Shown one piece after another: positions 23,150-58,403 of a DNA stretch of 64,000 nucleotides (positions are counted from its first letter, which is position 1; each line of letters opens with the position of its first letter). Below the pieces are notes generated by a model. It had not been told where the DNA came from. It was given only the letters and a program-made list of their open reading frames with translations, and ran no database searches. The stretch is from Lytechinus pictus (lineage: Eukaryota), in NCBI RefSeq assembly GCF_037042905.1, contig NC_087259.1, forward strand, positions 9,796,001 to 9,860,000, in the 5' to 3' direction. A program made the translations under genes and the position numbers.

Positions 23150-23295
23150 TTAATCACGGGGTACATACAGCAGACGGTTTTCGGTGTCAGAAGGTAGATC
23201 ACTAATAGCATTCTTGGTCGATGTGTCGATCAGGGTCGCCTTAATATCAGCAGGTGAAAGGTTGGGATTCTTAGCTAGCAGTAGTGCTACAGCGC
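23150..23295 (-). CDS. Subtilase left copy exon 8 (terminal)
   Basis: ttccacag|GC GCT...; (G)[47 protein letters not shown]. Confidence 0.9.
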
Positions 23296-26200: not shown

Positions 26201-29200
26201 GCCCATCATCACTTTGTAATTTCGCCGTTTTTTTAGATTGCAAATTATACATTTTGGTAAAGGTATGAGGAATTAGGAAAACAATGTTTCCTAGATGGCC
26301 GCCATCTTGGATTTTACAAAATGGCTTTCAAAAACAGGGTTTTCGATATTATCTCGGCTTCTAAGTAACCTAGAGTCCTAGACTCGTAATTTTTGGCACC
26401 TATAACTCATCGTTTCTGAGGTCAAGGAATCTATTGGTATCAATAAAATAAAATTTTACGAAATTCTTCGAGTTACCAGACTAGGAACTCACATAAAAGT
26501 TCAAATTTAATGTTGCAAATTTATAGCGACCTGATCATACCTTTCCTTAAGGCAAATATATAGCCAGTGTGTTATACATGTTTATATGGCATGTATTTCA
26601 GGTCACATGATCAAGGTCAATTGTCATTTAGGGTCAAAGAACTTTAAACATGTGGGGGTATCAACTTGAAATCTTTACCAATTATTTTTTTAAGTCATCA
26701 TAACTTGACGAGCGTATGGGTAATTAAATAATGAAGTATCAATTTTCATCTTGCATGAGTGTCAGATCATATGACCAAAGTCAAACTTCGTTTAGGGTCA
26801 ATGAACTTTTGACAATGTTATTGTATCAGAATCTAAACTTAATCAAGGCTAAGATTTAACCTTCTTATAATGGTCATGAATTAGTCCTATCGGGAAATGG
26901 ATGAATGGATTTTGGGTCAACTCAATATTCATATCAATTGAAATTGATAAAAAAAGGTTAGGATTTTACATTTTATACATAATTTTGAAATTCAAGATAA
27001 ACAAAATACAAACAAGGGAAACATGAATATAATGGTTATCAGATATCAAAATTTAGATGAGTATAATTTCAGCAGGGAGTTGTGAGGAGGCAACTCCCTG
27101 ATTTCAGGTTCTGGTACAAGGTCAAGAACATTTCTGATCCATTAAGTTGGGTTTAAAAAATATACTTTGTTAAGAAATTTTTCTTCAAATTGATCGTTTT
27201 CAACTGGGCATGGAAACAAAAATATATAAAAACCTCGAAATGCCCGAAATTACATTTTGTGCACTTTGGTTTCGCTCTTGTCTAATGTGCAGTGGGCCAT
27301 GAATATGGGGTGCCCAATTGACGAAATCGTATGGATCAAAACTTGCACGATGAATCAATCCGAAATTGCACGAATGATGACGCCATTGTAAAATTTACTA
27401 AATGATCAATATCAAACAACCAATCAAATTACAATGATCTATTTAGGTGTCATATAATCCTTGATATGTACCTGCTATAAGGGAACTCCATTGACCAGAG
27501 CCGCTGCAATCAAGTACCCTCAACCCATATATATTTACATTTGGTGCTACTCCGTACATGCTCGCTCCTATTGTTCCTGCACAGTGTGTGCCGTGTCCAA
27601 GACAGTCTATCCCCTAAAATGAAAAAGTCGTATTTCATGTGACGATTTTTAAAAAATAGATTTTTATCATCAAAGAATTTAATGTATCAATAACTTTCCA
27701 TAGCATGTAAAATTTGAGACCATTACGTCATATCTGATAATAAACATAATAATAATAATTACACATGTATATTGCACAATTTCTATATTCATATACTCAA
27801 CTGCGCATTACCATATTATTATTACCCCGCTATAGCCCTGCTGCCTACAGGCGCTCTGGCATTCAAGGAATTTCTTCCTACAGGGTACCCATTCACCTCA
27901 CTTGGATTGAGTGCAGCACAATGCGGGTAAATTTCTTGCTGAAAGAAAACACGCCATGGCTGGGAATCGAACCCACGTCCCTCATATGAAAGACGAGAGC
28001 CATAACCACTAGACCACGTCGCCACCACAAAATATCGATAAGTAAGATATTTAAAAAAAATGCGATAGAGTAAGACGACCGCCCCGGGGCGCTTTTGCGT
28101 CTGCTAAAGAGAAATTTTCCAAAAAAATCGTGCACACTTCTGCTGATTATTGTGAAAAAAATTAAGGTTTTCATTATTTCGGTGGGGTCCCTTTCTGCCC
28201 CCCCCCCCCCCGCTGCTAATGACCATGCAACCAACCACAGCAAGTCGGCCGCTGGTCCATAGCCATATAATAGCCCGGTAAAAATATTCGACGAGAAAAT
28301 ATCCGACTAATACTATCGTACTTTGGCAAGAGGAAGCAAGTTACAAAAGTATAATTTGTTGTAAATGAGCAATGTGTGTATATGTTCGTCATTTACAAAG
28401 GCGTCAATGCAATTACCTTTCCATAGAACGATAATTTCCTCCAAATATTTTGCCTGAACGTGCAATTCAAATTCAAATTCAAATTTATTTCCACAGTCAA
28501 AATATACATATATACAAATCAATAACATTAATAGATATATTACACGTGGAGGGGTCAAAGAAAGCACAACTGCTCGTTGGCCCCAATGTAAGAAAAAAAA
28601 ATCATAATAATACATGTAAAATGAACAATAACAATATAGCAACATACAAAGGGTGCTTCAGAAAAAACAATAACTCAAATTTGACTGATGTGTCACTTGC
28701 TTCCTTTTGCCAAAGTTGGGCAGAATAGACCTTATGCATTAACGTCATCGCACCGTCATCTTAGAGGCTGAATTGACCATTGCCTTGCATGCAATGCCAG
28801 CTGGTGCATGCATCTGTGACAAATCCTCTGATGGAGGGCGCTACGAGATCATGACGTCATATGCATATGGTCGATCAACTGTAATAACTTACAAACGGTC
28901 TACCGTCGTTGACTGCATCAAACGCAGGGGAGGCTCGTCCTTCATAGTACAAATGGTCTGGGTAGATTCCTGAATCGACGACATATACATTAACACCTGA
29001 TCCACAACCTGTATGAAAAAATAAAAATGTAAATGAATACATAGCCTTCAGCTTCATCCCTTTATGGAAGGTATCCTTATTTGCCGACAACTAATTTGTG
29101 CAATATCAGAACAGTCATGGCATTCGATAGACAGATAGACAATATGCATATGACGTCATTATTTCATTGCGCCCTCCCTCGGATAATATAGGAAGTTGTC

Positions 29201-32200
29201 AAGAGATACACCAGCTGAAGATATCACCGACGCATCGTGGTCTAGGCAATGGCTTCAGCCTCCAAGATGGCGGTGCGATGACGTCAATACATAAGTTCTA
29301 TCATGGTTAGACTCCTGCAAAATGAGCGGAGCAATTCACTGTTTACGGGATGACGATGTGGAAACTATGCCATGTACCAGAGAAATGATTGCCAATCTGT
29401 ATTTTAATAAGCCTGAAGATCGCCACCAGACTGAAATCAATGGGAGCAGACAGGTTAACAGTAAGTCCAGATGAACATATTTATTTTCTGTTCGTCATTT
29501 ATATTTATATATTGTAACAAAATAAAAGGTTTATTTCATGTCAAGCATCGTTTTTGGAACGGTCAAGTACATAGAATTATTTTTAATCCATTGATATATA
29601 TAATTGCTTGGAAATCTAGTAATCCTTTGTAATCGATTCCAAAGGGTTTTTGCTTAAAATATACATTATCACAACTATTTTTTTAAATACAAGTGCACAC
29701 CTAGTTACCGAGAATGCGTATAGCATTTCCATTTATTTTAATGCAGGATTAAAGAGCACTGTCGATTGAATGCCTTGCTCAGGGGCATAGGTGCCGCGGC
29801 CGGGGATCGAACCCCGGACTTTTCATGGATATTCAGACGCCTTAGACCAATCGGCCACGACACCTCCACTAATACAGCGAAACATCGATGTTAATACTTT
29901 ATAATTACGTTGAATATGTATGTCTAATTATTCTTCACGGTTTTCGTATAAAGAGAAATTATATTAGCATTAACGCTAAAACATTTAATTCCTTTATGAC
30001 CATTTACTATTTACGGCCTAACAATTATTAAGCGACATCTTGAATCGTTGAGCCTGATCGATCATGCAATTCAAATTTCAAATTCAAATTCAAATTTATT
30101 TATTTCACTTCCATCAACAAATATTTGTATCCGTTGCAAAAAAAAAATTATTATACATATGTTGTGAAAAAAAAACCACTTAGACAATTTGGGCAACACA
30201 TTGTAGGTTTTAAATACATGTATGTATACTATTTTTCAATAGAAATTAAATTAAGATGAAAATGGAGGGACCCACTAATCTTGTTTCATGTTAGACCGTT
30301 TGCCGAGCATTAAAGCTAAATGAAAGTATAGTTGCAGTAAAACACTGATTTCGTGAGAAAGTCTGTAAAACCAAGGTTAAGTATTACTATATCATCGTGG
30401 ATCTAGATCTGGTACAGTTACATAAACTGAACTTTGTGAAATCATAAAATCCAAGCTGAAAAAAACGATCACACTGGAGATCGCCAACACAGATAGGCAC
30501 ACGTGGGACAGTGTATATTATTATTGCTGTAATAAAGACCCGACGGAAGTGCCCGAATCCGCGCTTATTTTGTTTATTTCTCAGAAATTACACAATTTCT
30601 TCAAGAATCCTCCGGCACATATTTTGTATTCATACAAACAGACACTTGGGTGGTCATTACATTGTATTCTGTAAAAAGTCATTTTGAGATCGTTACCACA
30701 ACTGGCCTTTATCTTTAAAGGGATGGTCCGGGCTGAAAGTATTTATAGCTCAATAAATATAGTAGAATTCACTGAGCAAAATGCTGAAAATTTCATCAAA
30801 ATCGGGAACAAAGTTATTGAATTTTTAAGTTAAGCAATATTTTGTGAAAACAGTCGTCATGAATATTCATTAGGTGCTGGGGTGATGGTGTCACATCCCC
30901 ACTTGTTCTTTTGTATTTTATTATATGAAATTAGGTTTATTCAAAAATTTTCCTCCAAGAACTAGAAAAATTGGATTGACAACTGATTTAGTGCATTAGA
31001 TATTTATTGCTGCAACTTATTTCATTATAAGGGAGACATATTATTCACACAAGTATGAAATAATGAAAATATTATGATTTTATGTAATAACATAAGAAAA
31101 CGGAAAGTGGGATGTGACATCATCAGCCCACCTAATTAATATTCATGATGACTATTTTCACAAAATATTGCTAAACTTTAAACTTCAATAACTTTATTAT
31201 TTGTTATCCAATTTTGATGAAATTTTCGGCATTTTGCTCAGTGAATTCTTCTCTATGTATTAAGATATAAATATTTTCAGCTCGGACCATCCCTTTAAGT
31301 GTGCCTTCGGAGGATTTGCGCTCGAAATTCTGTCCCATAATTATCGCAATCTGCGCGACAGGGTAAGCACGTTCTATATAGTTTTATTTGAAGACATAAT
31401 AATATTTCGGCTATATGCGTGTAATTATTTATTTATTCAAACTGAGCGACGGGATACATGGTTGAGGAAGTAGGAGGACCTGAATGTCAGAAACAGAGGA
31501 AAGTTTAAAATGATACTGGCAATAATACTGGTAGGACTGAGATAGCTGCATTACTGGAAATACTGGAATTACTGGGAAGGGTAGAATTACTGGATAGGCG
31601 TATTGAGTGAGAAGTACCGTGTATGGGCGGTAAATTGCCAGTTCGTCCACTGCCAACTCGTCCATTAACCACAATGGTATATCATCATTTAGTCTAATGC
31701 CTTTTTGTCCATCAACGTTTCGTCTAACAACCATTTGGTCCAATCATCACTTCGTCTAATCACCATTTCGTCTATTACCATTTCGTCTAATAACCAGTTG
31801 GTATAATACCCATTTACTTGACATTCATTTTGCACAATCAACGCTTTAGTTTAATTAGACCAAAATGTAAATGGACTAAATGGCTATTGGACCAACTGGT
31901 TATTAGACGGAATGGCATAAGACTAAATGAAAGTAGACCATGTGGTGAGTAGACGAACTGATGATAGACCAAATGGTAGTAGACGAGTTGGCATTTGGAC
32001 GAATTGGCATTAGACGAATTGGAGATAAACCGTATCAGTCTATCTGCAAGCCCCTGTGTTAATGAGCAAATGAGCAAGATTTATCCAAGTCCTCTCGTGG
32101 CTGAATTCATGTCCCTGCAAAATCTCGTGAATTGTGAGACTTTGTTTCTCAAAGAATTTAACCACTTTTTCCTTGAGTAAAATTAATTATTTTTCTACCA

Positions 32201-35200
32201 TTTGAAAGAGTAAACATTACTTTTTTATACTGATTATTTCTTTTGAATAAAATATTTTGATAAATAAGTGAATTTTAAGCATGAAAAGATGCCTCAAACA
32301 TAATTTTCTTCCTCTTTTTTCTCTTGCAAATTGTGCAAAATTGTGTGTTTTAGGCACAAACATTATTTATATCATCAGAACGCTCAAACTCTGTACTTTC
32401 TTACTATGTCACTTTTGATATGTGGCACCTTTTAGATGGGTCAGCAGCCAGCTTTTTCCAACAAAATGCAAGACGAGATTTCTGAAATTTCTGAGTAGCA
32501 TAAAATCCAGAGTTCTGATTGGTTGATTAGTGTTTTCAAAACACCAGGCGCGGGTAATTTGATAAGATTACCACATGGTGAGTGTGACCTTGCAGAGGCC
32601 CAGTGTGGGAACATTGGAATTTGCGTGGGTGTGTGGTTTCTATGACCAATCAGAGCGCAGTGTTCTTGTTTTTAAACTGCTAAATGTACTTGGCCTATGA
32701 GAAGCTGGCTACTGACCTATCTAAGATACCTCTTCTTATAAAAATTATATCATATTAAAGCTTAGATCTTCAGCTTTATCATTGTCTAAAAATTATTAGG
32801 GCACAACCAGTAATTAAGTGTAAAAACAACAAGTTTTGTTGCATGAAAATAATTATTTTGTTTCATGTTTTAGATCAATGGTTTCACCTATGTTACAAAA
32901 TTGTTTTAAAAATCCAGACACGTGACCTAAAAGAATGATATTTCTTCTTTATAATGATACCAAAAACATGAAATTTGGTCAATATTTAGAGCAGCAATGG
33001 CCGAATAAAAAAGGTGTTTTCATCCCCACCAAGCTCATTAACAATGCAAAACCCCTCTAGTTATGAATATCACTTGGATAAAAGAAGCTACTTTTTGAGG
33101 GCTTGCCGACTGACTGGTATGGGCGTCCTCGCATCCCCATAAAATAAGCGGTATGCGGTCTTGACATGGTTGTGTGGCGTTCATCGGATTTGTTTGGGCA
33201 TGTCGGTTTTGCGATTCCGTGAGATTTGATCTGGCTAGGAGCGAAGAGTCAGAAGTGAAATAGAAAAGTTCTACCCCAACTGGTTGTATATTGCAACCGG
33301 AACGAACCGCTTCGTCAGGAAAAAGGGACGGTTCGGCTAAATGTGTATGTATAATTATGTATGTGTGCGTGTGTTCGTGTGTGAAGGAGAGGGTGAGTTG
33401 AAGACATATGAATATATAATTTATATATGTCTATATATGTATAATATGTCAATATAGAAATCCTCTCAAAAAAGAGTGAAATTCCACTTGTTCAAGTAGT
33501 TAGATGGAGAACAATCCCTTTTCGAGTGAAAAGCAGAGTGAACACGATATCACTCGGATGCCTGAAGACTTCAGGAGTTCTTCCCAATGGGTTTGTATTC
33601 GCCATGTTGATGCGATGCGCGATTCTCGAGCAATGGCGTGCCCACTTGTGATTGGTTATAAGTGCGAAATTCGCTTGCTTCGTATTGGTCAAGTTCTCCT
33701 TGGTCACACACTCGACAACACGAGTGATATTGAGCGAAAGATCGGCTGTGTACAGTAAGGAAAATTGACCACTCGGAAGACGAGTGAGGTAGCGGACGAC
33801 GAAATATAGTGCTGAACACTCGGATCAGAGTGAATAACCGCTCAATGAGGAGTGAACGTTTGTTCGTTACAATAACATCGAGTGACGAACTCGCTCGTTT
33901 ACATTTAGAGAGATATAATGTTTGTGTGGGAGGGTTGCGATAGTGTGCTAGAAAGAGAGCATGGAGAGGGGGAGAGCTAGCCAGGGAGAAAGTTTTTAAT
34001 TGCAACAAGATGAAGGCTCTTAGATTAATTAAAAAGGGATGGTCCGGGCTGAAAGCATTTATATCTAAACAAATAGAGTAAAATTCACAAAGCAAAATGC
34101 TGAAAATTTCATCAAAATCGTAAGAGAAATTACAAAGTTATTGAATTTTAAGGTTTATCAATATTTTGTGAAAACAGTTATATATGCACATCTTCATGAA
34201 TATTCATTAGATGGGCTGATGACAGGGGCTGCGGAATGGTTTTCAAAGTGGGGGGGGGGCTGAGCCAAAAGTGGGAGGGGGCTGACCTTGCAAAAAATCA
34301 CAATCTTATGGTCATTTTTACGTTTTTGTACACGGTTTTAGAAAAAAAAGTGGGGGGGGGGGGCTGAAGCCTCCACCTAGCCCCCCGCTTCCGCGGCCCC
34401 TGGATGATGTAACATCCCCACTTTCTTTGTTCTTATGTTATTACATAAAATCATCAATGTTTCATTTTTCATAAATGTGTAAATGATGTGTCTCCAATAT
34501 GATAAAATAAGTTGCGGCAATAATACATATTGCACTTAATCAGTTGTCAATCCAATTGTTTTAGTTTTTGGTAGAAAAAAATGAATAAACCTAATTTCAT
34601 ATAATAAAATACAAAAGAACAAGTAGGTATATGACACTCATCATTAAGACATACCTCGAACTGTTTCACCGGAATAATGAAAATCTTTAAAATTCAATAA
34701 CTTCGTTATTTGCTGTCCGATTTTGATCAAATTTTCAGCACTTTGCTTTGTCAATTTTACTTTATTTATTGAGATATAAAAATTGTCATCCTGGACCATC
34801 CCTTTAAAGAAAAATATGTCAATCTTTGGAACTTAAAAATACCCTTGGCCTTGTAAGCTCCATCCAGAGGCAATGAACGTTGATCTATTCGATCCAGACC
34901 CCACGACGCAACAGCCGCAGGGTGAATTTCTCCATCTTCAGTTATGTACTTGATCTCCTCTCGGGCCAGAAGCTATTAAAAGATATAAATAATGACTGTG
35001 AAAAATGTTTTTGTGCCCAAAATACAATAAGACTTTCATGTATATTTCGCCATGACTTGTGTTCGTTATTTATGTTGCATGGTCAAATAAATAAGGACAT
35101 ATCCCAGTTATCTATTTTCAACTCATATCACTTTTCAGTTTTCGCTTGAAACTGACGGCATCATAGGTCGCCACCAAAGGCTACAGTGCACATTATGTAT

Positions 35201-38200
35201 TCTTTCGTACTTCTGTAGAAATTGGAAGCTATTTGCATATCGTTGTCTCTCCATTCTTTTTACCTCCATGGTTCAATTATCAACTAAGTGCGTGGGGACA
35301 CGTAATGATTCCAAGCACTGATCTGATAGTATTCAGATCAGCAATCTGTATACAGATCAATGATTATAAGTTGCTAATTCATTTCATGACAACGAACGTA
35401 CAGGGCGTCAACCCATTGTTGTCGGTGTTGCTGCCCTCTACGTTTGTTGTTTCATGATTTCAAGTTGGTTATGCATATATTCATTTCCATTGATTATACC
35501 TTTTGAAGAGCTGTGTTGGTCAGTTTAGCTGAAAACCCATTGATGGCAGCAGTGTAGGTGTGCTTGATAGAAACATCGCCGAAACGTCCCGAGAGGTCAG
35601 TCAGAAGAAGTTTCTTGATCACTTCTACGTCATAACCGGGCTGCATGATCAAATAAACAATCAATACTTTTGATAATATTTGATTTTACAATAACATAAT
35701 TTTAACGATTTTTTTAGTATTTCACAATAATATATTGAAACGAAAAAAATGTAATGTTTCACACTTAAAATTCTGCATGACGTCACATTTCATTTTTCTT
35801 TTTTATATTCATCGATCATTATATTATACCTCGAAGGAACATGATTAAACAACATCCACACTCCAAGTTTGGTAGGTATATGTAAACGTGACACCAGATA
35901 ATATTATGACCACATGATTTCCTTACACTTACATACAGAGGGAGGGGGTGGCTTTCGGGCCACGTATACCCACACATTATTTTCCAAGACAAAGAAAAGT
36001 TGCACAACAAAAAGAGAAAAGCAAAGGGTGAAATACGGAAATCCATCCCAAAATTTCATGTTTGTATTATTAAAGGTTAATGTTTGTTGCTCGTTAGCAG
36101 GGTTTTTATAACATATCCCCCATACGCTATGTCTGGGTCCTGACATTGTTGTGCTCATTTAGTCACCGATTCCTGTTTAGCCCAATTGAAATCCTTTCTG
36201 TAATATTTCCCTGGTTCTAAAAGATATAATGGTGATACAATTCATAATTTATAAATCTTCATCACACATACTCATGACCATCTGAAATTGAATTCCGTTT
36301 TTCCTTCTTTTGGAATTACAAATGGGCAGTGGCGTAACAGGCGGGGGGGGGCAGAGCTCACCGGGAAAAAAAACCGGGAAAAAGAAAAAAAAAAGGGGGA
36401 AGAAAGGGAAAGGGAAAGGAAAGAAAAAAGGGGGAAGGGAAAGGAAAAGGGAAAAGAAAACTAAGAAAAAACATAAAAAAGGGAAAACGGAAAGATAACG
36501 GGAAAAGGAAGGAAAAAAAAACAAGTGACAAAGAACAATTCGCCCCGATATACAAATACATTAGCATGATTAGTAAGACAGGGAAATAAATTAAAGATGA
36601 CAAAAAGGCAAACAAAAGCGGGAAATAAAGGCAGAATGGAATTAGCCAAAATCTAAATTGGAAAATAAAGAATAGGGACAAGATAACGTACACTACCGGG
36701 CTGCCGAGGATTGAGATAACGAGCGGGAAGAAAAACGGATGGTATATAGCATAATGTCGTATGAAAGTCTATCATAAACTTGCTAAATCTCCTAAGGCTC
36801 TGTCCAAGAGTCAAGACCCCGTGCAGTGGGGGCTCTTCATCTGTAACCTTTAATGGGTTCTATAACGGGCCCTTATATGGACCCTTCCTGCATTAAGCTT
36901 TACGTTGAAGCACTGGCGTACCGGGGGGTGGTTCCACAGCCAAGGGGAAATAAAAGAAAATAAAGGAGGCAGCGAAATGAGATGAATGAAAAGAAATATA
37001 TGACATGATATTTGCTATAATAATGTAAAAATCTATCACATAATTAGAATTTCATTTCAACAGGCCTTTTTTTTTTGGCTCGCTTCGCTCGCTGGCGACT
37101 TTTTACAAATTTTCCCACATTTGCTATGGTGTGCCCCTCACAATATTTGGATGATTACGATACACAATTGCATTGAATTTATGTGTTGTGTTAAAGTTAT
37201 ATAAATATACACGCAATTTGATTAAAATAAGTGGCCATCTGTAAGGTTTAAAATGGCTTTGATATCAAGAGGTTCCGGGGCTCTGCCCTGGAGCCACCCA
37301 TAAAGCACTGTTATATGGATGAGTTTGGACCATGGCCCCCAAAAGTTCTACAACCAAACAAACAAAATGAGGAAAGAAAGGAAAGTGTATTATATTTTTC
37401 TGAATATCACGTTAAAATCTATCTTCATGTTAGATTCTCATGAAAAGGTGATTTTTTATCTCGCTCGCTTCGCTCGCTCGGGACCTATATTAAGCTACTT
37501 CTTGCCAAAAGCGCCATACTCGGCCCCCTCAAGCATATAGAGCTTCGCCCTGATGCTCACAATCATAAGTTCATAACAAAAATCCTGTTCACCGTGGCGT
37601 ACAAAAAAAAGAGAGAAAAAGAGGAAAGAGAGGAGGGTGAATATGATATCATCTTTTTAACATTATGTCAAAATCTATCACAAAATTGGATTTTTTGCAA
37701 TAAAGATGTCAAAAATATTTTGCTCGCTCACTTCGCTCGCTCGCTTATATATATATATACATTTGCCCGATACGCCATATCGCCCCCTCAAAATTTTTGC
37801 CTTATGACGCCATTGCCTGTTCAATGATATGAACGGAAAATGTTTGGTTTAGTATCTGCGCTATATAGATGGTCCATATTATTATTATTATAAAATGTCG
37901 AATGATTTCTGAAATGACCCGGTCGATCGACACATAATTTTCTGTTCAGATATGAAATATCAGATATCAACTGGTAGTGAACAGCTGTCCCTTTAAAGGA
38001 GAAATATATTGAAAATCGTAAAAATGGAGAATCATATATCAAATCAAAGGAGAAAATAAGGAGAACACGATGGTGTACATCATTTATCATGGAGACCGAT
38101 GGAACTCAGTTAATTGATAGTTTAAAGTTCTCTCTCTGAATGCTTCAAACACGCAGAATTACGTCCGCGAAATTGGGGATTTTTTATGACGTCACTTTCT

Positions 38201-41200
38201 GTACGAGAGGCGTGATTGGCCCTCCCACGTGAAGCTCCACTTGCATGCAAAACCTGTTGCGAGGGTACGTTTTCTCCACATTGTCACTGAATACTTCGAT
38301 CACGAAATGAAAGAAAACCCAGAATTTTATCTAGATTTGGATTTTCAAATTGATGATTTTGAAGATGAAGAGAATGATGATGAAGTGCACAAAGTGACGT
38401 AGTTGGGGGTAAATTGGGGGAATCGATGATGAGGAGTCGGACAATTCAACTTGCAACACGATCACATGCCGATTCGCTACCAACTCATGCAGCTGCTAAG
38501 TGCTAGCTGCACCGCGCGTGCCAAATTGAATTCACGAAAATGACTTACCACACTGTCCAGACAGAGTCTCTTACTTCTGTGACTATGAAGAAGGAAAATA
38601 ATGATAAAACTGTACTTACAAATAAGTGAATGTAATCCGAACCTGAAGGCAAATCAACTCAACGAATAGCAGCAGACGATATGCACCGATGATAAACTTC
38701 ATGTGGCTGGGATAGATTGTCACTCGTTCTGTTAGATGTAATTTTTATCTCATTAATTTGACAAAATTACGAAACTCGGGGAATTATTTATCTATATAAA
38801 AATATAGTAACATCTCGTATAATTTTTAAATTACGATAAAACGTTTTTTGAAGGAAAACGTTGAGGTAAAATTAAATTAGACGTAAAAGATCCCCAACAT
38901 GCGTAGCTTGATTGAGAGCTGTGCAACACGTGCATAGATCTACTCTCTCAGCCACTGGCGAGCAAGCAATACGGCATGTTTGTGATTTTGATTACGATCA
39001 CATATACGAGCTTTTAAAAGGTTTTATCGTAATTTAAAAAATAATACGAGATGTTACTATATTTTTATATAGATAAATAATTCCCCGAGTTTCGTAATTT
39101 TGTGAAATTAATGAGATAAAAATTACATCTAACAGAACGAGTGACAATCTATCCCAGCCACATGAAGTTTATCGTCGGTGCATATCGTCTGCTGCTATTC
39201 GTTGAGTTGCCTTCAGGTTCGGATTACATTCACTTGTTTGTAAGTACAGTTTTATAATTATTTTCCTTCTTCATAGTCACAGAGGTAAGAGACTCTGTCT
39301 GGACAGTGTGGTAATTCATTTTCATGAATTCAATTTGGCCCGCGCGGTGTAGCTAGCACTTAGCAGCTGCATGAGTTAGGTAGCGAATCGGCATGTGATC
39401 GTGTTGCAAGTTGAATTGTCTGACATCATCGGCGTAATTCCCCAATTTTACCTCCAACTACGTCACTTTGTTGTTCATTTCATCATCATTCTCTTCATCT
39501 TCAAAATCATCAATTTGAAAATCCAAATCTAGATAAAATTCTGGGTTTTCTTTCATTTCGTGATCGAAGTATTCAGTGACAGTGTGGAGAAAACGTACCC
39601 TGGCATTAGGTTTTGCATGCAAGTGGAGCTTCACGTGGGAGAGCCAGTACGCATCTCGTACAGAAAGTGACGTCATTAAATTCAAGTCAATTCAGAGACC
39701 GATGCGAGGCATATTTCGGAGAGGCATTTTGAGCGTTTTTTAATCGGCGATTTTCACCTTATGTATTATTTTCGTTATTTTTGAATGACCCACTGATAAT
39801 CCCCACATCATTACCTTTCCATTGACATATAATAAGACCACATTCATAATCAATATAGTTCTCCTTTAATATCATCCCAACGTGTTAAATTGATTTTAAG
39901 TGCAATTTTAACACTCGTGTCGCATGGAGACATTCTTAACGCGTATGAGACTTTCATATGGTTGTGCTACACAAACAGCGAAAGTGGACTGTTCTCAAAG
40001 CCGACGTCGGAATTTTGTGTATCACCAATTTTTCTTCTTGTTGTTGTTCCTTTATTTTATTTTATTTTATTTTTATTTTTTTTTATTGCTGGACTGACGC
40101 CGCCTCGGACTGAGTCCACATTTGGAAGTTGTTTGAAGGCGCCTTTAGTTCTACAGTTGGTATGTGTATCACCTCCAAGTGGACTCATGTCGGCTTTGAT
40201 CACTGAACTAGAAATAGCAAACAACAGTTATTGCTAACGAAATATGGAAAATGTTGGCGTGAAAAGAACGGCGACTCGTGTCACGTAAATAGGCGTCATC
40301 GGGGCCTGCTTTACGTGCATCAGGGAATATTGATCTCGAAGCGGCTTATTGTGTCCACTTTCGGCGTAAGTGTAACGCCACCAACAGTGCAGGCGCGAAG
40401 GTGGCTTGATAGGCGGGGTCGGAGACGGCTTGAAACCAGGCGAATGTGTATCAGCGGCCGTAGTGACCTACATATAGAGCTTCTTAAACTGACGCCAGCA
40501 TTGTTACGTGTCTTTTTATTATTTTTCCAGGGTTTTTTTTTTTGCATTTCATTGATTTTGATTTTAGACCTTGAGATCCCATGAGCTTCGAAGAGCGATC
40601 CGATCTTTCCTTACTGAAACTCTAAACCGTGATCTGCATAAAATCTGATTTTCGGTTTAATTCGATCCGATTTTCATTTAATTCTCAAAATCCCTTCATT
40701 GTTCATGCTACAAACAGCTCGGGTCTTATCTATATGTCGCTGCTTAGCCTCTTTTCCCGGCCGCGATTTTTCTTTTGTCGAGACTTGTGCACCCGATGCG
40801 AGTGGGTTTATTTAATCAGACTACGCCTCATGAATATTCATGGCTCGACTCGATTGGTGTGGCTCAATCAGTAAACCAATCCTGCAGTCGGTCTCAAGGA
40901 CGCAGGTTCGAGTCTCGAATGGAACGCCTTTTCACAGTTTTTGTTTTCATTAAAAGAAAATAAAAAGTCCAAGATTTGTGGTCTGATTCAAAGCCCATAC
41001 GAAACAGCCTATTATTATCGTCATTCCCACTGCCCTCTCGCGTCGGGTGCACAAGTACTGATGAAGAAAAAAAAATCGCATCCCGACTCCTTTTCGCCTT
41101 CTGCATACACTTGACGTCATGCCCTGGAACATCTCCATCTTAACATTTCCTTTGCATTTTCTCGGGATTAATTATTTATCGATACGATAATTTCAGTTTG

Positions 41201-44200
41201 GTGATAATTATTTAGCTATACGTATATATACAAAGTACTAGGCGTGCTGCAACGCTTTTAGAATGGGGGAACGAAGCTATAGGGGGCCGGGGGGGGGGGG
41301 CTTTCTGATGAAGTATAATATTTGCGTTTAGAGAGCATTTATAATAATTTTCTTTGGATTTAACCTTACTTAAAATTCACTGCGAAGAACTATTATCGTA
41401 TCTGACGAAAACTGTTCATTTTACTAAGTACGCACAGAGCGAGCGATCGTTAATGAGCTCTCAGAGTCTATCCGATTAGAAACTAATGTTTACATCAAAA
41501 TGATATCTCAGTTATACTTTCCTACCGTTTTGAGGGCGTTCCACGGTAAGAATGAGGTCCATGCCATTTTCATCAAATTCGACAGAGAGTAAAGATTAGA
41601 ACCTAAATATTCCATGAATAAAAAAGATAACACGAGTACACGTGCTTGATTTTTGTTTCTTTATTTCTTGCTATCGAGCTCTGAGGTTCACCCAATTGAG
41701 AGTTCTCGAGAATTACCCAATCAAAATAACTGGGCATATTTTTACACCTCACGAGATCACAAGGTTGAGTTTAAACCTCTATTACTCTAGTTAAAATCCA
41801 TTTGAATCTCATCACATTTTACAGTTCAGGATTGTATACCAAAGATGGCAAATCCATTTAATAATATTCATTTGCCATGTTCGCTCTTTTAAGGCTAGCA
41901 GCACCTTTATTTACGAAAAAAAATAGGTGAAAGATAACAAAAATACATCCTAAATATTCGAAATTTCTATAACGAATTAAAGAAGTACAATTAATGCTGC
42001 ACCTTCTTGAAAAACAATGCCATTTTCACCAAAAATTTGCAAAGTTCATGTGCTTGTTTGAATCACCTGTTCATTCATTGTGACATCATTGCGCATTGTG
42101 TGAAATGTGCATTCCCAGTCAGGATCGTTGCCCCCCCCCCCCGAAATTTTGAAAACTGAAAACAGTATAGTAAATGATGCCATAAGTATCCTACTCAAGA
42201 TGTAAAGTGCTCCAAAGCAGCATTTTTATCTCTTCAAATTTTAAAATGTACCCATCCGGTCACTGTTGGCTTCCAACACTATTTGTCACTAAGTCTACAT
42301 TGACTTGAATTATCTGACTATTATGTGCATCATTTGAGCTTAAAACTGCTTTATAATGCAATGTTTTACCATTGAAAAATAATACAATTTTCTAGCTATA
42401 CAACACCGCTTCCTCGTAGACATGGTAGATAAGCAATTTAATTTTTTTTTACTAGCTATGAGGTACCACAAATTCCTGTTTCCCTGATTTATATACTTAT
42501 CTAATTTTCAAAAAAAAAGAAAACGGATACATCTACAATACTATTTTTTTTTCTAAAAGCACACAACTTTTTTTAGATAGAAATAATCCTCACTCCGTCT
42601 AATAGAATTATTCCTGTCCCTAAAAAATATATTTGTTTGTTATGTATGAAAAAATAAAATATGAAAAGAAGACAGATATTAATTAGAAATGAGTTAATTC
42701 GGTTGTTTTCAAGGGGGTGGGATCCAGAGCGCTTCGCCTCTCCCCAATTGGCGGTGCCAAACAGTGAATGAGAGGAAGAAGAAAAGGAAGATAAGGAGTA
42801 AGAACAGTAAATGAAATAAAGGGAGGGGAATGATTGGAAATTGGATATATTTTTTCGCGTTAATATATAAAAATCAAAATTTCGCGCGCGCAGTGGCTGA
42901 TGTTGAATGATATAAATAAAAGGTCTGCTCAATAGGCCGGATAAAACGGAGCTTACTTATAAATCAAATTAAGCAAAAAATCATACACAAATGATTCTTC
43001 TCGCGTCTCGAGTTTGCATTATTTGTTTTTAGCGTAATGCGCATCCTGCACTATTTTATTCATATTTACAAAATAGTTACAAAATTTTCAGCTCGCGCTA
43101 CGCACTGGCATCAGCTGTTTAGTTAGATACCCTGTTCATGGTTACTAAAAACGTTCGGAAAGTCCAGCTATTATCTCAGAATATCAACAATTTTTAGCCC
43201 ACGCGTCGCACTCGCATTATTTATTTGGTAAGATATTATTTTCATTATTCACTGCAAACAGTCATTAACATGTTTCTTTTCAGGTCAGTATATCAACAAT
43301 TTGAGCTCCTGCTTCGCTCTCGACTTTTTGAACATGCAAAAAAAATTCGTGTCCGCCTTTGCCACTCTCTAAATATTCTTCTGCCCCACTTGCCTCTCCC
43401 CTAGTTCATATTATAAAAAAAAATCCTGGTGTTGCCACAGTATATCTCTTTGTATCAACGATTTACACGCTTTTCACATTCGTAGTTATTGAATTCAACA
43501 ATCGTAATAATTGTATATTACCCAGTTGTTGTGTGTCCGGACAGGTTGTGTGTCCGGACGATCAATTTTAGAAAGTCATTCGGAAAAAAATACAAGCGAA
43601 GTTTCATCAATTTTTAGTACAAAATGTTAGGAAATATTATAGAGAACAAAATAGTAGATGATTACAACTATTGAATTCACATTTTTAGTGTAATCCAAAG
43701 ACAAAAAAGAAGGCTTCAAAAATATAGTGTCCGGACACCCGACCCCCATCCTACTGTATATGCTAATAAATGGATATAGTTCTTCGATGATTATATATCA
43801 TGTTTATACCTTAATAATCAGTATCAATGCGTAATTATATATAGATTCAATGATCCCTCCAGACTACATGTAGCGTGCAAAGAGTCACACATTTCCATTT
43901 CGGTCTATTCTTAATTGTCACGAGCCTAATTGCAACATGAACGCACAAGATATTTATTCTACCGATATTTTATTTCTTACAAACAGGTTATTTACAAAAG
44001 AGTATTCATATGATTCGCCATTAACACTAAGGAATGGCTAGCACCGATCATCCTATTCCAATATGGTGAAGAAATATCACTGAACATTTGGAGCTACTTG
44101 TCTGGCGGAAGAATTAGAAATATTTTATTGTTCAGGTGATGAATTTGATCCCGTCAGGAGATGTCGTCATAAAAGTCGAATTCGTTTTTTTTTTAATGAA

Positions 44201-45465
44201 CGGGTCGAGGTACCTTTTTCTGGTCGAATATGGAACGTCAGATATGTAGCCTATCCACTGGTAATAAATTCTAGACCGTCTCATATCAGTATTATTTTAA
44301 TGATTTTTTAATGTGCCGTTTTATCACACGGGTCTAAGAAATATTATTTGCACGAGTGGCACCGATTGTTTGTCTCCTCGGTCCGAAGTGCATAAACTAG
44401 TATATTTGTTTCATTTATTGGTTTCTGCAACACTTTTCATAAACACATTAACAAAGAAAATACAATAATAATATATGCATAACTGACAAGCAAAACATTG
44501 AACAAATTTGCATTTTCTATTAATACATATCGATTTTAGAAGGTTGCAGGGGTTGCCACTATAAGCTAAGATTGACTGCGTGGCAACCACACACATTAAT
44601 CACGTTGTTTAAACACGCCACTCTAACAACTATAGTTAAAAGTTCTAAGCAGGTTATTTAAAGTTATTAACAATTTGTCTTAAAAATTTCCAAAAAATAA
44701 TCATTAAAAAATTTAAACAACTTGATAGAGTGGTGGGGTTAAACAATGTGATTAATAATAGTTAATAAAATTTAATGCGTAAATTATATAGCGTTATCAT
44801 TGAGGCTCATCAAAAGAGTATTAAAGAGCACTCGTGACGTCGTCATTTCATTTTAATGTAGGGCCTACACTTTAGATGTAACAGTCTTACAAGTTGTAAG
44901 ATTGTTGAATCAAAAGTGTGCAATAAAACAAAATTCATGATGAGGGACGTAATATGAAATAAATAGTTCAGAGTTCATTGAACCATAATATCTCATCACT
45001 AGTCTTGGTTAAGTATTATTCGTTGTATGTCCACTTTGATATATCATTACCATTATTCAAACTTCATATCAAATCACTTGATAATATACATAATTAAAAG
45101 GAAAAATGTCAAACTAGCTTGAGAATGACTCGGCGCACGTTAGTAAACAATCTTTAATTTCCGACATAAAAAAAAGTTCTGACATAATATGTACACTAAA
45201 AGAAACCATCCCTAATGTCATATTAGACAGCTTTAAGATGATTTTGGGGATCAGAATGGCTTCGGATGAGACTCTGCTTGTCTTAGAAACGGGGGTATAA
45301 TGAAGAAGGTGGGATCGACAAGGGAATGTAGTCTGAGCGACACTGACTCACCTTCAGTACAACTATGTAATGGTCTTTAATTGCCTCTTCCACCGTGTAG
45401 AATGTTGCATTTTTAGCACTTGTGGCTACCACTAAAGCTGACAAAATTACGACAATCAACTTCAT
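23150..45465 (-). CDS. Secreted proteinase K-family subtilase (peptidase S8A with I9 propeptide), left copy, 8 exons, 383 aa
   Basis: join(45465-45352, 35640-35500, 34972-34843, 29008-28893, 27613-27472, 25941-25751, 24055-23884, 23295-23150) = 1152 nt. All introns are GT-AG, with consistent phases 0,0,1,0,1,0,1. Motifs: signal peptide, [22 protein letters not shown] (Asp), GHGTHCAG (His), SGTS (Ser). Confidence 0.92.
23884..24055 (-). CDS. Subtilase left copy exon 7 (catalytic Ser)
   Basis: tttag|...|gtgagt; [57 protein letters not shown](G). Confidence 0.92.
24504..25091. mobile_element. TTAA-flanked (Kolobok-like) MITE
   Basis: TTAA|AGGAGAATGAAAC...GTTTCATTCTCCT|TTAA with ~190-bp imperfect TIRs. 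Confidence 0.8.
25503..25710. mobile_element. Harbinger-like palindromic MITE
   Basis: GGGGTGTTTCACAAAGAT...ATCTTTGTGAAACACCCC. Confidence 0.7.
25751..25941 (-). CDS. Subtilase left copy exon 6 (oxyanion Asn)
   Basis: tttcag|...|gttggt; (A)[63 protein letters not shown]. Confidence 0.92.
27472..27613 (-). CDS. Subtilase left copy exon 5 (catalytic His)
   Basis: ttttag|...|gtacat; [47 protein letters not shown]. Not in the ORF track; translated by hand. Confidence 0.92.
27745..28026 (-). mobile_element. tRNA-derived SINE
   Basis: On the minus strand: A box TGGTCTAGTGG, B box GGTTCGATTCC, core TTCAGCAAGAAATTTACCC...AATGGGTACC and an (ATT)n tail; homologous to 52580-52876. Confidence 0.8.
28720..28876. 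mobile_element. ~160-bp ATAGAC...GTCTAT MITE just downstream of exon 4 (left copy)
   Basis: Inverted copy of 29134-29301; carries TGACGTCATATGCATA. Confidence 0.7.
28893..29008 (-). CDS. Subtilase left copy exon 4 (catalytic Asp)
   Basis: catacag|...|gtaagt; (G)[38 protein letters not shown]. Confidence 0.92.
29134..29301. mobile_element. ~160-bp ATAGAC...GTCTAT MITE upstream of exon 4 (left copy)
   Basis: Short TIRs containing TGACGTCA; matching copy at 61537-61707. Confidence 0.75.
29700..29867 (-). mobile_element. tRNA-derived SINE (second family)
   Basis: Minus strand GGAGGTGTCGTGGCCGATTGGTCTAAGG...GGTTCGATCCC...GCCCCTGAGCAAGGCA. Confidence 0.7.
30314..30714. mobile_element. TTAAAG...CTTTAA-bounded element
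   Basis: Bounded by TTAA at both ends; its right end is related (inverted) to a fragment at ~24064-24217. Confidence 0.55.
30719..31294. mobile_element. TTAA-flanked (Kolobok-like) MITE
   Basis: TTAA|AGGGATGGTCCG...CGGACCATCCCT|TTAA; same family as ~34035-34804. Confidence 0.85.
31628..32032. mobile_element. Palindromic MITE built of ~20-bp TAGACCAAATGG/TTCGTCTA subrepeats
   Basis: CGGTAAATTGCCAGTTCGTC ... GACGAATTGGAGATAAACCG; related arrays at ~59930-60570. Confidence 0.6.
34035..34804. mobile_element. Kolobok-like MITE with a nested CAGGGGC...GCCCCTG element (~34223-34402)
   Basis: AGGGATGGTCCGG...CTGGACCATCCCT|TTAA; the insertion interrupts GGGCTGATGATGTCACATCCC, which is intact in the 30719 copy. 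Confidence 0.8.
34843..34972 (-). CDS. Subtilase left copy exon 3 (propeptide/mature junction)
   Basis: taatag|...|gtattt; [43 protein letters not shown](G). Confidence 0.92.
35500..35640 (-). CDS. Subtilase left copy exon 2 (I9 propeptide)
   Basis: atgcag|...|gtataa; [47 protein letters not shown]. Confidence 0.9.
36327..37815. mobile_element. hAT-like element (CAGTGGCGTAAC...TGACGCCATTG), left arm only
   Basis: Inverted termini, a purine-rich tract and GCTCGCTTCGCTCGC repeats; absent from the mirrored position (~55690); no intact TSD. Confidence 0.6.
37997..39865. mobile_element. 1.87-kb TTAA-flanked (Kolobok-like) element with an internal ~660-bp inverted repeat, left arm only
   Basis: TTAA|AGGAGAAATATATTGA...TCAATATAGTTCTCCT|TTAA. 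The empty site GATGATATTAAAGGGAC is at ~52479-52495 in the other arm. Internal arms 38187-38850 / 39015-39676. Confidence 0.88.
45352..45465 (-). CDS. Subtilase left copy exon 1 (signal peptide and start of I9)
   Basis: [38 protein letters not shown]|gtgagt. Confidence 0.9.
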
Positions 45466-46323
45466 CTTGCTTCTTCGCTGTTCGATCCTTGCTCGCCAAA
45501 GACGATTTAAAATCTTGCTCATGAACAATCTATATTTATGCGTGAAAGTTTTAGCGGTATCACTGACTAAAGGTATAATCCAAGTGTTACAAAAAGAATT
45601 ACAAACCTGGCACAATTCGAATCGGCTTTCACGCATCGGTGGGAGCTAATGATCGGTAAACCCCCTATCCGCATGATCCGCCAGAAGTGTTATTATCCAT
45701 TTTATTCTACATTTATCAATTCTGTATCAATTTTGATCCATAAGTTTCTTATGGATCGATAATCCTAAGGAAATGACACTCGCATGATTGTTTTGGACAA
45801 ATCTCAGATCAGATTACATTAAGATTTAAAAAACGGCTTAAACGAAGGATTGATCTATATTCACCTTTGCTCTTTGGATTTCCAATGTCTGCCGAGGACT
45901 TTGTCCCATTTTGTAGAGCACTGTTCTTTGTCACTTTTCTGACAGACCATTCAATGTAAGCTGCTTTTAATCTTAATGTGATATGATCTGAGATTATTCC
46001 AAGATAATCTTGCAAGACCGATTTATCGATTTCCCTTATAAAAAAACAACTTATGGCCCAAATTAAATACAAAATTGATAAATGTATAATAAAATGGATA
46101 AGAACATGCACTCCTGTCGGGTAGGGGGGGGTCACCGATCATTAGCTCCCACCAATGCGTGAAAGCCGATTCGAATTGTGCCAGGTTTGTAATTCTTTTT
46201 GTAACACTGGGATTATCTTTAGTCAGTGACACCGCTGAAACTTTCACGCATAAATATAGATTGTTCATGAGCAAGATTTTAAATCGTCTTTGGCGAGCAA
46301 GGATCGAACAGCGAAGAAGCACG
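45466..46323. promoter_or_regulatory. Shared bidirectional promoter/5' region of the two subtilase genes
   Basis: 858 bp lie between the divergent ATGs, with mirrored TATA-like CATAAATA at 46249-46256 (+) and 45533-45540 (-), ~70 nt upstream of each ATG. Confidence 0.6.
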
Positions 46324-46437
46324 ATGAAGTTGATTGTCGTAATTTTGTCAGCTTTAGTGGTAGCCACAAGTGCTAAAAATGCAACATTCTACACGGTGGA
46401 AGAGGCAATTAAAGACCATTACATAGTTGTACTGAAG
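46324..46437 (+). CDS. Subtilase right copy exon 1
   Basis: The 114-nt CDS is identical to the reverse complement of 45352-45465; donor gtgagt. Confidence 0.9.

Positions 46438-58364: not shown

Positions 58365-58403
<39 letters not shown>

What the first reader, a model, noticed from the sequence alone, without database searches (positions are those of the whole stretch)
35500..35640. Sharp identity step inside exon 2 marks a likely gene-conversion boundary
Seen (hand counts): exon 1 CDS differs at 0 of 114 nt. Exon 2 differs at 3 of the first 119 nt, then 7 of the last 22. Exon 3 differs at 9 of 130 (7 synonymous) and exon 4 at 23 of 116. Intron 1 aligns almost throughout, apart from insertions and deletions, whereas introns 2-3 align only in patches. 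A single duplication event would not give this step. Inference: an old inverted duplication whose promoter, signal peptide and most of the propeptide were later homogenised while the catalytic domains diverged, giving the same regulation and secretion with different enzymes.
Basis: partly seen in the sequence, partly recalled or inferred. Interest (0 to 1): 0.7.

Follow-up and report, generated by a model that had tools for sequence, protein, structure and literature searches.

The report
Gene conversion between mirrored protease genes
Two head-to-head, mirror-image copies of a secreted proteinase-K-like protease gene share a 10-kb block (core promoter to the middle of exon 2) that was copied from one copy to the other long after they duplicated; the edge is real and sharp, but this is an ordinary kind of gene conversion.

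Summary
Exon 1 differs at 0/114 nt, exon 2 at 3/119 then 7/22, exon 3 at 9/130 (7 synonymous) and exon 4 at 23/116.

The two genes, A (minus strand) and B (plus strand), are intact 8-exon S8A subtilases. Each has a signal peptide and an I9 propeptide. Their ATGs lie 858 bp apart at the centre of a palindrome with arms of about 25 kb.

A maximum chi-squared scan puts the break at 35522|35521 (B: 56481|56482). Chi2 is 353, against a maximum of 30 in permutations.

A second, centre-side break lies 192 bp upstream of the ATG. The 10.1-10.3 kb block at about 95% identity is therefore flanked on both sides by DNA at about 76-83% identity. That pattern indicates a non-reciprocal transfer inside an older inverted duplication.

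Two further short high-identity tracts cover the start of exon 6 and exon 8.

RNA contigs show both genes spliced as predicted, and they branch exactly at the step. Contigs of a related species suggest the arms coalesce after the species split, but the cross-species tree test could not be completed.

This is a known kind of event, comparable to globin genes, opsin genes and palindrome arms. Interest is modest.

The parts
35500..35640 (-). Exon 2 of gene A (141 nt, I9 propeptide). The identity step lies between 35522 and 35521, i.e. exon positions 119|120.
56363..56503 (+). Exon 2 of gene B. The step lies between 56481 and 56482.
35522..45657 (-). Homogenised tract, arm A (10.1 kb). It covers 192 bp upstream of the ATG (with a TATA-like motif), exon 1, intron 1 and exon 2 nt 1-119. 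Mismatch to arm B is 5.2%.
46134..56481 (+). Homogenised tract, arm B (10.3 kb).
45658..46133 (.). Palindrome centre, not homogenised. 45688-45840 matches 45957-46106 at only 75%, and the middle ~120 bp do not align. It is unique in the genome.
45352..45465 (-). Exon 1 of gene A (114 nt: start codon, signal peptide, start of the propeptide).
   Evidence: An RNA contig joins it to exon 2.
46324..46437 (+). Exon 1 of gene B, identical to A's in all 114 nt.
23150..34972 (-). Exons 3-8 of gene A: 34972-34843, 29008-28893, 27613-27472, 25941-25751, 24055-23884, 23295-23150. This is the end of the propeptide plus the S8 catalytic domain, and it lies in the old, diverged part of the arm.
57776..61949 (+). 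Exons 3 and 4 of gene B (57776-57905, 61834-61949). Exons 5-8 lie beyond the window, at window-equivalent 64792-64933, 66461-66645, 69539-69710 and 70536-70681 (locus L001).
25827..25981 (-). Short extra high-identity tract: the last 40 nt of intron 5 (0 mismatches) plus the first ~115 nt of exon 6. 7/155 differences.
23026..23340 (-). Short extra high-identity tract: exon 8 with flanking intron and 3' flank. 10/217 differences; exon 8 dS is 0.05.
36328..37849 (.). Insertion specific to arm A inside intron 1. 36560-37849 is a 1.29-kb dispersed element with at least 40 full-length copies at 92-98% identity.
52622..55691 (.). Insertion specific to arm B inside intron 1. It contains a 2.4-kb element whose other copies are 98-99% identical.
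56547..56681 (.). Old dispersed repeat (at least 40 copies at 71-86%) in intron 2 of B, about 45 nt past exon 2 and absent from A. It is a possible homology barrier just outside the tract.
20900..35521 (-). Outer, old part of arm A. Alignable patches are 74-86% identical to B, apart from the exon 3 (92.5%) and exon 8 (93.9%) blocks. The partner in B runs from 56482 to about 73330, beyond the window.

Best explanation
An ancient inverted duplication of about 25 kb produced two head-to-head proteinase-K-like (S8A) protease genes. The duplication is dated by neutral divergence of at least 0.20 in alignable introns and dS of 0.34 in exons 4-7.

Much later, at K of about 0.05, one or a few non-reciprocal transfers between the arms (interlocus gene conversion, possibly long-tract) overwrote a 10-kb block in one copy with the sequence of the other. 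The block runs from 192 bp upstream of the ATG, through exon 1 and the whole 9.7-kb intron 1, to nt 119 of exon 2.

The distal end of the tract lies where local divergence was high (7 differences in the next 22 nt), just before an indel or repeat heterology in intron 2. Shorter transfers also homogenised the start of exon 6 and exon 8.

Shown here: the two sharp edges, the old-level divergence on both sides of the tract, two intact genes, and both genes transcribed and spliced. Inferred: the transfer mechanism, its direction, why the tract stops where it does, and that the two enzymes differ in function.
For:
- The break at 35522|35521 has chi2 353 against a permutation maximum of 30.
- A second break at 45658|45657 has chi2 116 against 34, with 23.8% mismatch on the centre side and 3.5% on the tract side. 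The centre's own inverted match is only 75%.
- dS(A,B) is 0 in exon 1 and 0.07 in exon 2a. It is 0.26-0.71 in exons 3, 4, 5 and 7. Exons 1-2a against pooled exons 4, 5 and 7 gives P = 3e-6.
- Intron 1 of A has no colinear similarity to intron 1 of the next paralogue C (dS to A and B about 1.1), so constraint cannot explain 95% identity over 10 kb.
- The 805 bp next to the step exist in only two copies in the genome. No paralogue is closer than A and B are to each other in exon 2 or exon 7.
- The arm-specific insertions checked are young transposable elements.
- RNA contigs of run X1 contain the A exon 2-3 joint (depth 677), the B-type exon 2 end joined to exon 3 (depth 501), and a contig joining exon 1 to exon 2 that ends exactly at 35522.
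- A related species' DNA contig over 35534-35845 differs from A at 22 sites, while A and B differ at 12 there. It carries the B letter at 6 or more of those 12 sites.
Against: - The cross-species test is incomplete. The table of the relative's letters was truncated, so its distance to arm B is only bounded (about 12-22 against 12 for A-B).
- No DNA run of the window's own species was on offer, so the assembly at the palindrome could not be checked with genomic reads.
- Identity inside the tract is heterogeneous (88.8-97.8% per 500 columns, P = 3e-17). 'One event' is therefore not established.
- There is no GC enrichment in the tract (35.8% against 34.9%). This neither supports nor excludes biased conversion.
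Confidence: 0.85

Rival explanations
1. A younger partial inverted duplication, by fold-back or break-induced replication starting at the palindrome centre, replaced the inner part of one arm. On this view the event was not a conversion tract lying within the arms.
For: The high-identity block is long (10 kb) and lies next to the centre of a palindrome.
Against: The centre-side 172 aligned columns show 23.8% mismatch, and the centre's inverted match is 75%. The block is therefore flanked by old DNA on both sides. A fold-back copy should be young right up to its turning point. In outcome this rival is still a non-reciprocal transfer.
Confidence: 0.07
2. Chimeric origin: the step arose because the 3' part of A or B was imported from a third, divergent paralogue, rather than because the 5' part was homogenised.
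For: The genome holds about 50 loci of this protease family. In exon 7, B is closer in protein sequence to paralogue C than to A.
Against: - dS(B,C) in exon 7 is 1.27 against dS(A,B) of 0.43, so the B-C protein similarity reflects fast change in A, not recent transfer.
- The outer introns of A and B are colinear and alignable at 74-86%.
- No closer third copy exists.
- The centre also carries the old divergence.
Confidence: 0.04
3. Assembly artefact: the inner arms are two haplotypes of a single-copy region, wrongly laid out as an inverted repeat.
For: Arm divergence of about 5% is in the range of allelic divergence in very polymorphic marine animals (own knowledge). No genomic reads of this species were available.
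Against: - There are no N gaps.
- The joins are seamless and in frame inside exon 2 in both copies.
- Each arm carries its own young transposable-element insertions.
- Independent RNA contigs show two transcripts that share exon 1 and exon 2a and then continue into A-type or B-type exon 2b, exon 3 and exon 4. Both genes therefore need, and have, this 5' part.
Confidence: 0.03
4. Purifying selection alone, with no transfer, keeps the promoter, exon 1, intron 1 and most of exon 2 similar.
For: Identity is highest (98-99.5%) around exon 1 and the core promoter.
Against: Ten kilobases of intron stay at about 95%, while intron 1 of the same gene family's next paralogue shares nothing alignable with it. 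Synonymous sites in exons 1-2a are also nearly identical. The change happens within about 20 nt.
Confidence: 0.01

Closest known systems
Head-to-head RH2A-alpha/beta opsin genes of cichlids, and human red/green opsin genes (PMC3514295)
   Same: The paralogues are head-to-head. Some introns are highly similar while neighbouring introns and coding parts stay distinct. That paper reads this as intronic gene conversion with selection keeping the proteins different. It also cites rodent genome work showing that head-to-head duplicates convert as readily as head-to-tail ones.
   Different: Here the converted block is 10 kb and includes the promoter and two exons. Its edge lies inside an exon, and the pair forms a true palindrome with a short centre.
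Human fetal globin genes HBG1/HBG2 (Slightom et al. 1980; own knowledge, not checked here)
   Same: The 5' part of the duplicated genes (promoter, first exons, part of an intron) is homogenised, with a sharp boundary and an older, diverged 3' part.
   Different: The globin genes are in tandem (direct) orientation, the tract is about 1.5 kb, and the boundary sits at a simple-sequence stretch in an intron.
Arm-to-arm gene conversion in Y-chromosome palindromes (Rozen et al. 2003, listed in the references of PMC3194840; details from own knowledge)
   Same: Inverted arms lie around a short spacer and carry genes, and intrachromosomal non-reciprocal transfer keeps the arms alike.
   Different: Y palindrome arms are more than 99.9% identical over their whole length. 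Here only an internal 10-kb block is at 95%, and the centre and outer 15 kb have decayed to about 76-83% identity.
Proteinase K / aqualysin subfamily of S8A subtilases with an I9 propeptide
   Same: - Pfam Peptidase_S8 and Inhibitor_I9 match the exon translations.
- The best solved relatives are keratinase, aqualysin-1 and proteinase K.
- The Asp, His and Ser motifs are present in both genes.
   Different: These are animal-like intron-rich genes (8 exons, first intron of 10 kb) in a family of about 50 loci. Gene A has unusual residues next to the catalytic Ser and the oxyanion Asn.

Membership tests
Interlocus (ectopic) gene conversion tract | A discrete block of raised identity between paralogues, bounded by sharp changes and flanked on both sides by lower identity. 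| tested here: met
   Breaks at 35522|35521 (chi2 353) and 45658|45657 (chi2 116). Mismatch is 5.2% inside, against 17-24% outside.
Interlocus (ectopic) gene conversion tract | The raised identity holds at neutral sites (introns, synonymous sites), so it is not due to constraint. | tested here: met
   6.1 kb of aligned non-coding columns in the tract, mostly intron 1, lie within a block at 5.2% mismatch. dS is 0.036 in exons 1-2a against 0.34 in exons 4-7. There is no intron 1 similarity to paralogue C.
Interlocus (ectopic) gene conversion tract | Tree incongruence: paralogues group within species inside the tract and by orthologue outside it. | tested here: inconclusive
   Only contigs of a relative laid on 34700-36330 were available. 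Over 35534-35845 the relative differs from A at 22 sites and A from B at 12. The relative's distance to B is bounded at about 12-22 because the table was truncated.
Interlocus (ectopic) gene conversion tract | No other source (a third copy, a mobile element) accounts for the shared block. | tested here: met
   The 805 bp beside the step have exactly two copies in the 811-Mb genome. The closest other paralogue is 70% identical in exon 2 protein.
Palindrome kept uniform by arm-to-arm conversion (Y-chromosome type) | Inverted arms around a short spacer. | tested here: met
   The arms are colinear from about 45840/45957 out to about 20900/73330.
Palindrome kept uniform by arm-to-arm conversion (Y-chromosome type) | Near-identity along the whole arms. 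| tested here: not met
   The outer 15 kb and the centre are at about 76-83% identity overall.
Peptidase S8A, proteinase K subfamily, with I9 propeptide | Subtilase fold signature and I9 propeptide detectable by profile. | tested here: met
   PF00082 matches exon 5 (34 bits) and exon 7 (31 bits) above the 21.8-bit cut-off, and exon 8 at 19.8 bits, just below it. PF05922 matches exon 2 at 22.7 bits against a cut-off of 21.2. The top PDB matches are keratinase, aqualysin-1 and proteinase K.
Peptidase S8A, proteinase K subfamily, with I9 propeptide | Catalytic Asp, His and Ser in that order, within their motifs. | tested here: met
   DSG/DTG, HGTH and GTS motifs are present in both translated genes. 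This was read from the sequence and not mapped on a structure.
Peptidase S8A, proteinase K subfamily, with I9 propeptide | Proteolytic activity and secretion. | not testable with these tools
   The N-terminal hydrophobic stretch in exon 1 looks like a signal peptide.

The most novel reading that the evidence does not exclude
The tract edges may be held in place by selection rather than by chance. On this reading, recurrent conversion keeps a common 'regulation and secretion cassette' identical in both genes (core promoter, signal peptide, first two thirds of the propeptide), and also keeps the C-terminal exon identical. Selection for different substrate-binding regions rejects conversion of the middle exons. 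The result would be a constant-ends, variable-core design that might recur across the roughly 50-member protease family of this genome.
Probability: 0.15. Interest if true: 0.5.

Novelty: new member of a known kind. Interest (0 to 1): 0.3.

Why it matters
This is a clean, well-bounded natural example of a long conversion tract between head-to-head paralogues. Both edges are mapped to about 20 nt, and the old divergence is preserved on both sides.

In practice, trees or duplication dates for this protease family will disagree between the 5' exons, the middle exons and the last exon. dN/dS scans across the pair will also be distorted.

Biologically, the two diverging secreted proteases have near-identical core promoters, signal peptides and most of the propeptide. 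This makes the pair a convenient system for asking how co-regulated paralogues diverge in specificity. It does not open a new question.

Tried and rejected
- **Six-frame Pfam I9 search of the genome** found nothing, because the exon pieces are too short. The exon 2 translation alone does pass the I9 cut-off.
- **The search of protein representatives with exon 2** returned only four short ORF fragments and one weak unrelated hit, with no full-length relatives. The contig behind one fragment gave no information about the organism.
- **The search for homologous proteins with the exon 2 ORF** found no candidate, probably because its length filter excludes the 383-aa spliced proteins.
- **Full-length protein search was not done.** The spliced 383-aa protein has no reference and long letters may not be typed. 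The full-length search and the protein-level cross-species tree were therefore left out.
- **One scan of metagenome contigs** with a 26-nt exon 2 pattern found nothing.
- **Raw RNA run X21** showed no reads on the exons, so that sample is silent for these genes. It gave no transcription start sites.
- **Are the three differences in exon 2a fixed between the paralogues?** In run X1, one contig covers exon 1 and exon 2a with A's letters at a depth close to the sum of A and B. Contig assembly can drop single-letter variants, so no conclusion was drawn.
- **GC-biased conversion:** no GC difference between the tract and the outer DNA.
- **Positive selection:** exon 6 has dN 0.19 and dS 0.10. The low dS comes from the short converted stretch at its start, so no claim is made.
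- **Relative-rate test against paralogue C:** no overall asymmetry (23 against 20 unique changes, P = 0.76). Changes are clustered by region only.
- **Literature searches** found analogues but nothing on this locus or family.
Full report
**What is there**

The window is G000:C15:9796001-9860000 of an 811-Mb eukaryotic genome. The interval 35500-35640 is exon 2 of a gene on the minus strand, which I call gene A. The exon is 141 nt, in phase 0, and has an AG acceptor and a GT donor. Its translation passes the Pfam cut-off for the I9 subtilase propeptide.

An inverted-repeat scan and blastn show a large palindrome centred near 45898. Its arms are colinear from about 45840/45957 out to about 20900/73330. 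The right arm runs past the end of the window and was fetched as L001.

By comparing conserved frames and splice sites I built both gene models.
- Gene A (minus strand) exons: 45465-45352, 35640-35500, 34972-34843, 29008-28893, 27613-27472, 25941-25751, 24055-23884, 23295-23150.
- Gene B (plus strand) exons: 46324-46437, 56363-56503, 57776-57905, 61834-61949, then 64792-64933, 66461-66645, 69539-69710 and 70536-70681 beyond the window.

Both reading frames are open (383 and 381 aa) and all introns are GT-AG. Each protein has an N-terminal hydrophobic signal-like peptide, the I9 propeptide and an S8 catalytic domain with the Asp, His and Ser motifs. The best solved relatives are keratinase, aqualysin-1 and proteinase K.

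The two start codons are only 858 bp apart. Intron 1 is 9.7 kb in A and 9.9 kb in B.

**Checking the observation**

| Exon | Differences A vs B |
|---|---|
| 1 | 0/114 |
| 2, nt 1-119 | 3/119 |
| 2, nt 120-141 | 7/22 |
| 3 | 9/130 (7 synonymous) |
| 4 | 23/116 |
| 5 | 30/142 |
| 6 | 24/185, plus a 6-nt gap |
| 7 | 39/172 |
| 8 | 6/146 |

Within exon 2, 3/119 against 7/22 gives P = 8e-5.

On a chain of 10,350 aligned columns, the maximum chi-squared break falls between A 35522 and 35521 (B 56481|56482). This is exactly exon 2 position 119|120.
- Mismatch is 5.7% inside and 17.1% outside.
- Chi2 is 353, against at most 29.9 in 1000 permutations.
- The support interval is about 20 nt.

Sliding windows stay at 95-97.5% for the last kilobase up to the break and drop to 80-88% just beyond it.

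The unaligned parts of intron 1 are arm-specific insertions. The two large ones I checked are young, high-copy transposable elements, with other copies at 92-99% identity. It is not met.

1. **The block has a second edge.** Going from the centre outwards, the first 172 aligned columns show 23.8% mismatch and the next 1328 show 3.5%. The break lies at A 45658|45657 and B 46133|46134, which is 192 and 190 bp upstream of the two ATGs. Chi2 is 116 against a permutation maximum of 34. The central 472 bp are unique in the genome, and their own inverted match is only 75%. The 10.1-10.3 kb block at about 95% therefore sits inside an older palindrome that is about 76-83% identical on both sides. This is what a transfer between existing arms predicts. 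It argues against a newer fold-back copy made from the centre.

2. **Neutral sites agree.** dS(A,B) by segment:

| Segment | dS(A,B) |
|---|---|
| exon 1 | 0 |
| exon 2, nt 1-119 | 0.07 |
| exon 3 | 0.26 |
| exon 4 | 0.32 |
| exon 5 | 0.71 |
| exon 7 | 0.43 |

Exons 1-2a against pooled exons 4, 5 and 7 gives P = 3e-6.

3. **Constraint cannot explain the block.** The nearest other paralogue, C, lies on contig C2. It has the same eight exons, with identical lengths for exons 1-5 and 7, and its dS to A and B is about 1.1. It shares only exons and dispersed repeats with gene A, and nothing colinear in intron 1.

4. **There is no third donor.** The 805 bp on the inner side of the step occur exactly twice in the genome. 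No paralogue is closer than A and B are to each other in exon 2 or exon 7. B's exon 7 protein is closer to C than to A. However, dS(B,C) there is 1.27, so this reflects rapid amino-acid change in A rather than an import.

5. **The outer part is itself a mosaic.** A segment scan with permutation finds two more near-identical stretches.
   - A 23340-23026 covers exon 8 with its flanking intron and 3' flank. It has 10/217 differences (P < 0.002), and exon 8 dS is 0.05.
   - A 25981-25827 covers the last 40 nt of intron 5 (no mismatch, P = 4e-4) plus the start of exon 6. It has 7/155 differences (P = 0.002).
   - Synonymous counts support both stretches (P = 2e-4 and 6e-4).
   - Exon 3 is not significantly different from the outer background (P = 0.10 and 0.20).

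**Transcripts and a related species**

No genomic run of the window's own species was on offer.

Contigs of run X1, from the same species, cover exons 2 and 3 but not intron 2. They carry three informative features.
- The joint 34972 to 35500, which is gene A's exon 2-3 splice, at depth 677.
- A second joint in which 13 letters replace A's exon 2 end. These letters are gene B's exon 2 end, at depth 501.
- A 234-nt contig made of exon 1 joined to exon 2. It matches A without a difference and stops exactly at 35522, where the two genes begin to differ.

Both genes are therefore transcribed in one sample at similar depth and spliced as modelled, including across the 10-kb intron. The step is visible in independent RNA data. 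A raw-read RNA run (X21) showed no expression.

DNA contigs of a related species (organism B) align to intron 1 and exon 2a.
- Over 35534-35845 one contig differs from A at 22 sites, whereas A and B differ at 12 sites there.
- At 6 of the listed sites the relative carries B's letter.
- If the interior of the table is complete, the relative is about 18-22 differences from B as well. The two arms would then be closer to each other than to the relative, with the arm differences split between derived changes in A and in B. That is as expected if the arms last shared a sequence after the species split.
- Because the table was truncated, the bound on the relative's distance to B is 12-22. I count this as suggestive only.

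**Mechanism**

The best reading is an old inverted duplication followed by non-reciprocal transfer between the arms.

Divergence in the block is about 5% (JC about 0.05), against at least 0.20 in alignable outer introns and dS of 0.34. The last homogenisation therefore dates to roughly a sixth to a quarter of the age of the duplication.

Identity within the block is uneven: 88.8-97.8% per 500 columns, highest around exon 1 and the core promoter. Some of the low stretches are small replaced segments. More than one event is therefore possible.

The distal edge lies just before a very mismatch-dense 22 nt. It is also about 65 nt before an old dispersed repeat that is present in B's intron 2 and absent from A. 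Dense mismatches and heterology are known to stop heteroduplex extension. That this is the cause here is inference.

The direction of transfer cannot be told from one genome.

**The 'same regulation and secretion, different enzymes' claim**

Each arm's homogenised part contains about 190 bp upstream of the ATG, including a TATA-like motif, the signal peptide and 40 of the 47 codons of exon 2. Both transcripts occur together.

In the catalytic part, dN is 0.19 at dS 0.34. Changes are regionally clustered: gene A's lineage changed mainly in late exon 6 and exon 7, next to the catalytic Ser and the oxyanion Asn, and gene B's mainly in exons 4-5.

That the enzymes differ in function is plausible but untested.

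**Comparison with what is known**

Conversion between duplicated genes with a sharp boundary is textbook. Examples are the fetal globin genes, the red/green opsin genes and Y-chromosome palindrome arms.

A close analogue is the head-to-head RH2A opsin pair of cichlids. There, some introns are nearly identical and others divergent while the coding sequences stay distinct. The same paper cites genome-wide rodent work showing that head-to-head duplicates convert as readily as head-to-tail ones (PMC3514295). Inverted duplicates make up 20-40% of linked young duplicates in animals (PMC3194840).

This case is a new member of that kind. It is notable only for how cleanly it is bounded: two mapped edges, a 10-kb tract and the old divergence preserved on both sides.

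**Verdict**

Novelty is low (new member of a known kind) and interest is about 0.3.

Noticed in passing
whole genome G000: The genome carries about 50 loci matching the exon 7 peptide of this proteinase-K-like S8A family. Many sit in clusters, for example on contigs C1, C12, C20 and C21. That is a large expansion for what looks like a marine animal genome.
   Followed up: partly
window 23884-25941 (gene A exons 6-7): Gene A has lineage-specific replacements right next to the catalytic Ser and the oxyanion Asn, while B and paralogue C keep the usual motifs. Of A's 23 unique changes, 13 fall in exon 7. The triad itself is intact.
   Followed up: partly
G000:C2:65828762-65844481 (loci L004-L006): The nearest paralogue, C, has the same 8-exon structure, with identical lengths for exons 1-5 and 7, but a 4.6-kb first intron. 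Its dS to A and B is about 1.1.
   Followed up: yes
window 38217-39646: The A-specific insertion in intron 1 contains nested inverted repeats: three pairs of 176-177 nt arms at 95-98%. It looks like a fold-back type element.
   Followed up: no
window 36560-37849 and 53139-55514: Two young transposable-element families. One is a 1.29-kb element with at least 40 near-full-length copies at 92-98% and thousands of first-look candidates. The other is a 2.4-kb element with copies at 98-99%.
   Followed up: partly
window 20613-21226, 59019-59632, and 74051-74352 beyond the window: A ~600-bp dispersed repeat occurs in the 3' flank of gene A, in intron 3 of gene B and in the 3' flank of gene B, at 86-87%. 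It could be mistaken for arm homology.
   Followed up: partly
run X9: A seawater metatranscriptome run holds 23% of the sampled words of gene A's exon 7-8 stretch. RNA of this organism, or of a very close relative, therefore occurs free in seawater samples, for example as larvae or plankton.
   Followed up: no
window 40451-40511 / 51853-51912: Inside the otherwise ~95% identical tract, one 60-nt stretch shows 34 mismatches. It is a small replaced or rearranged segment.
   Followed up: no
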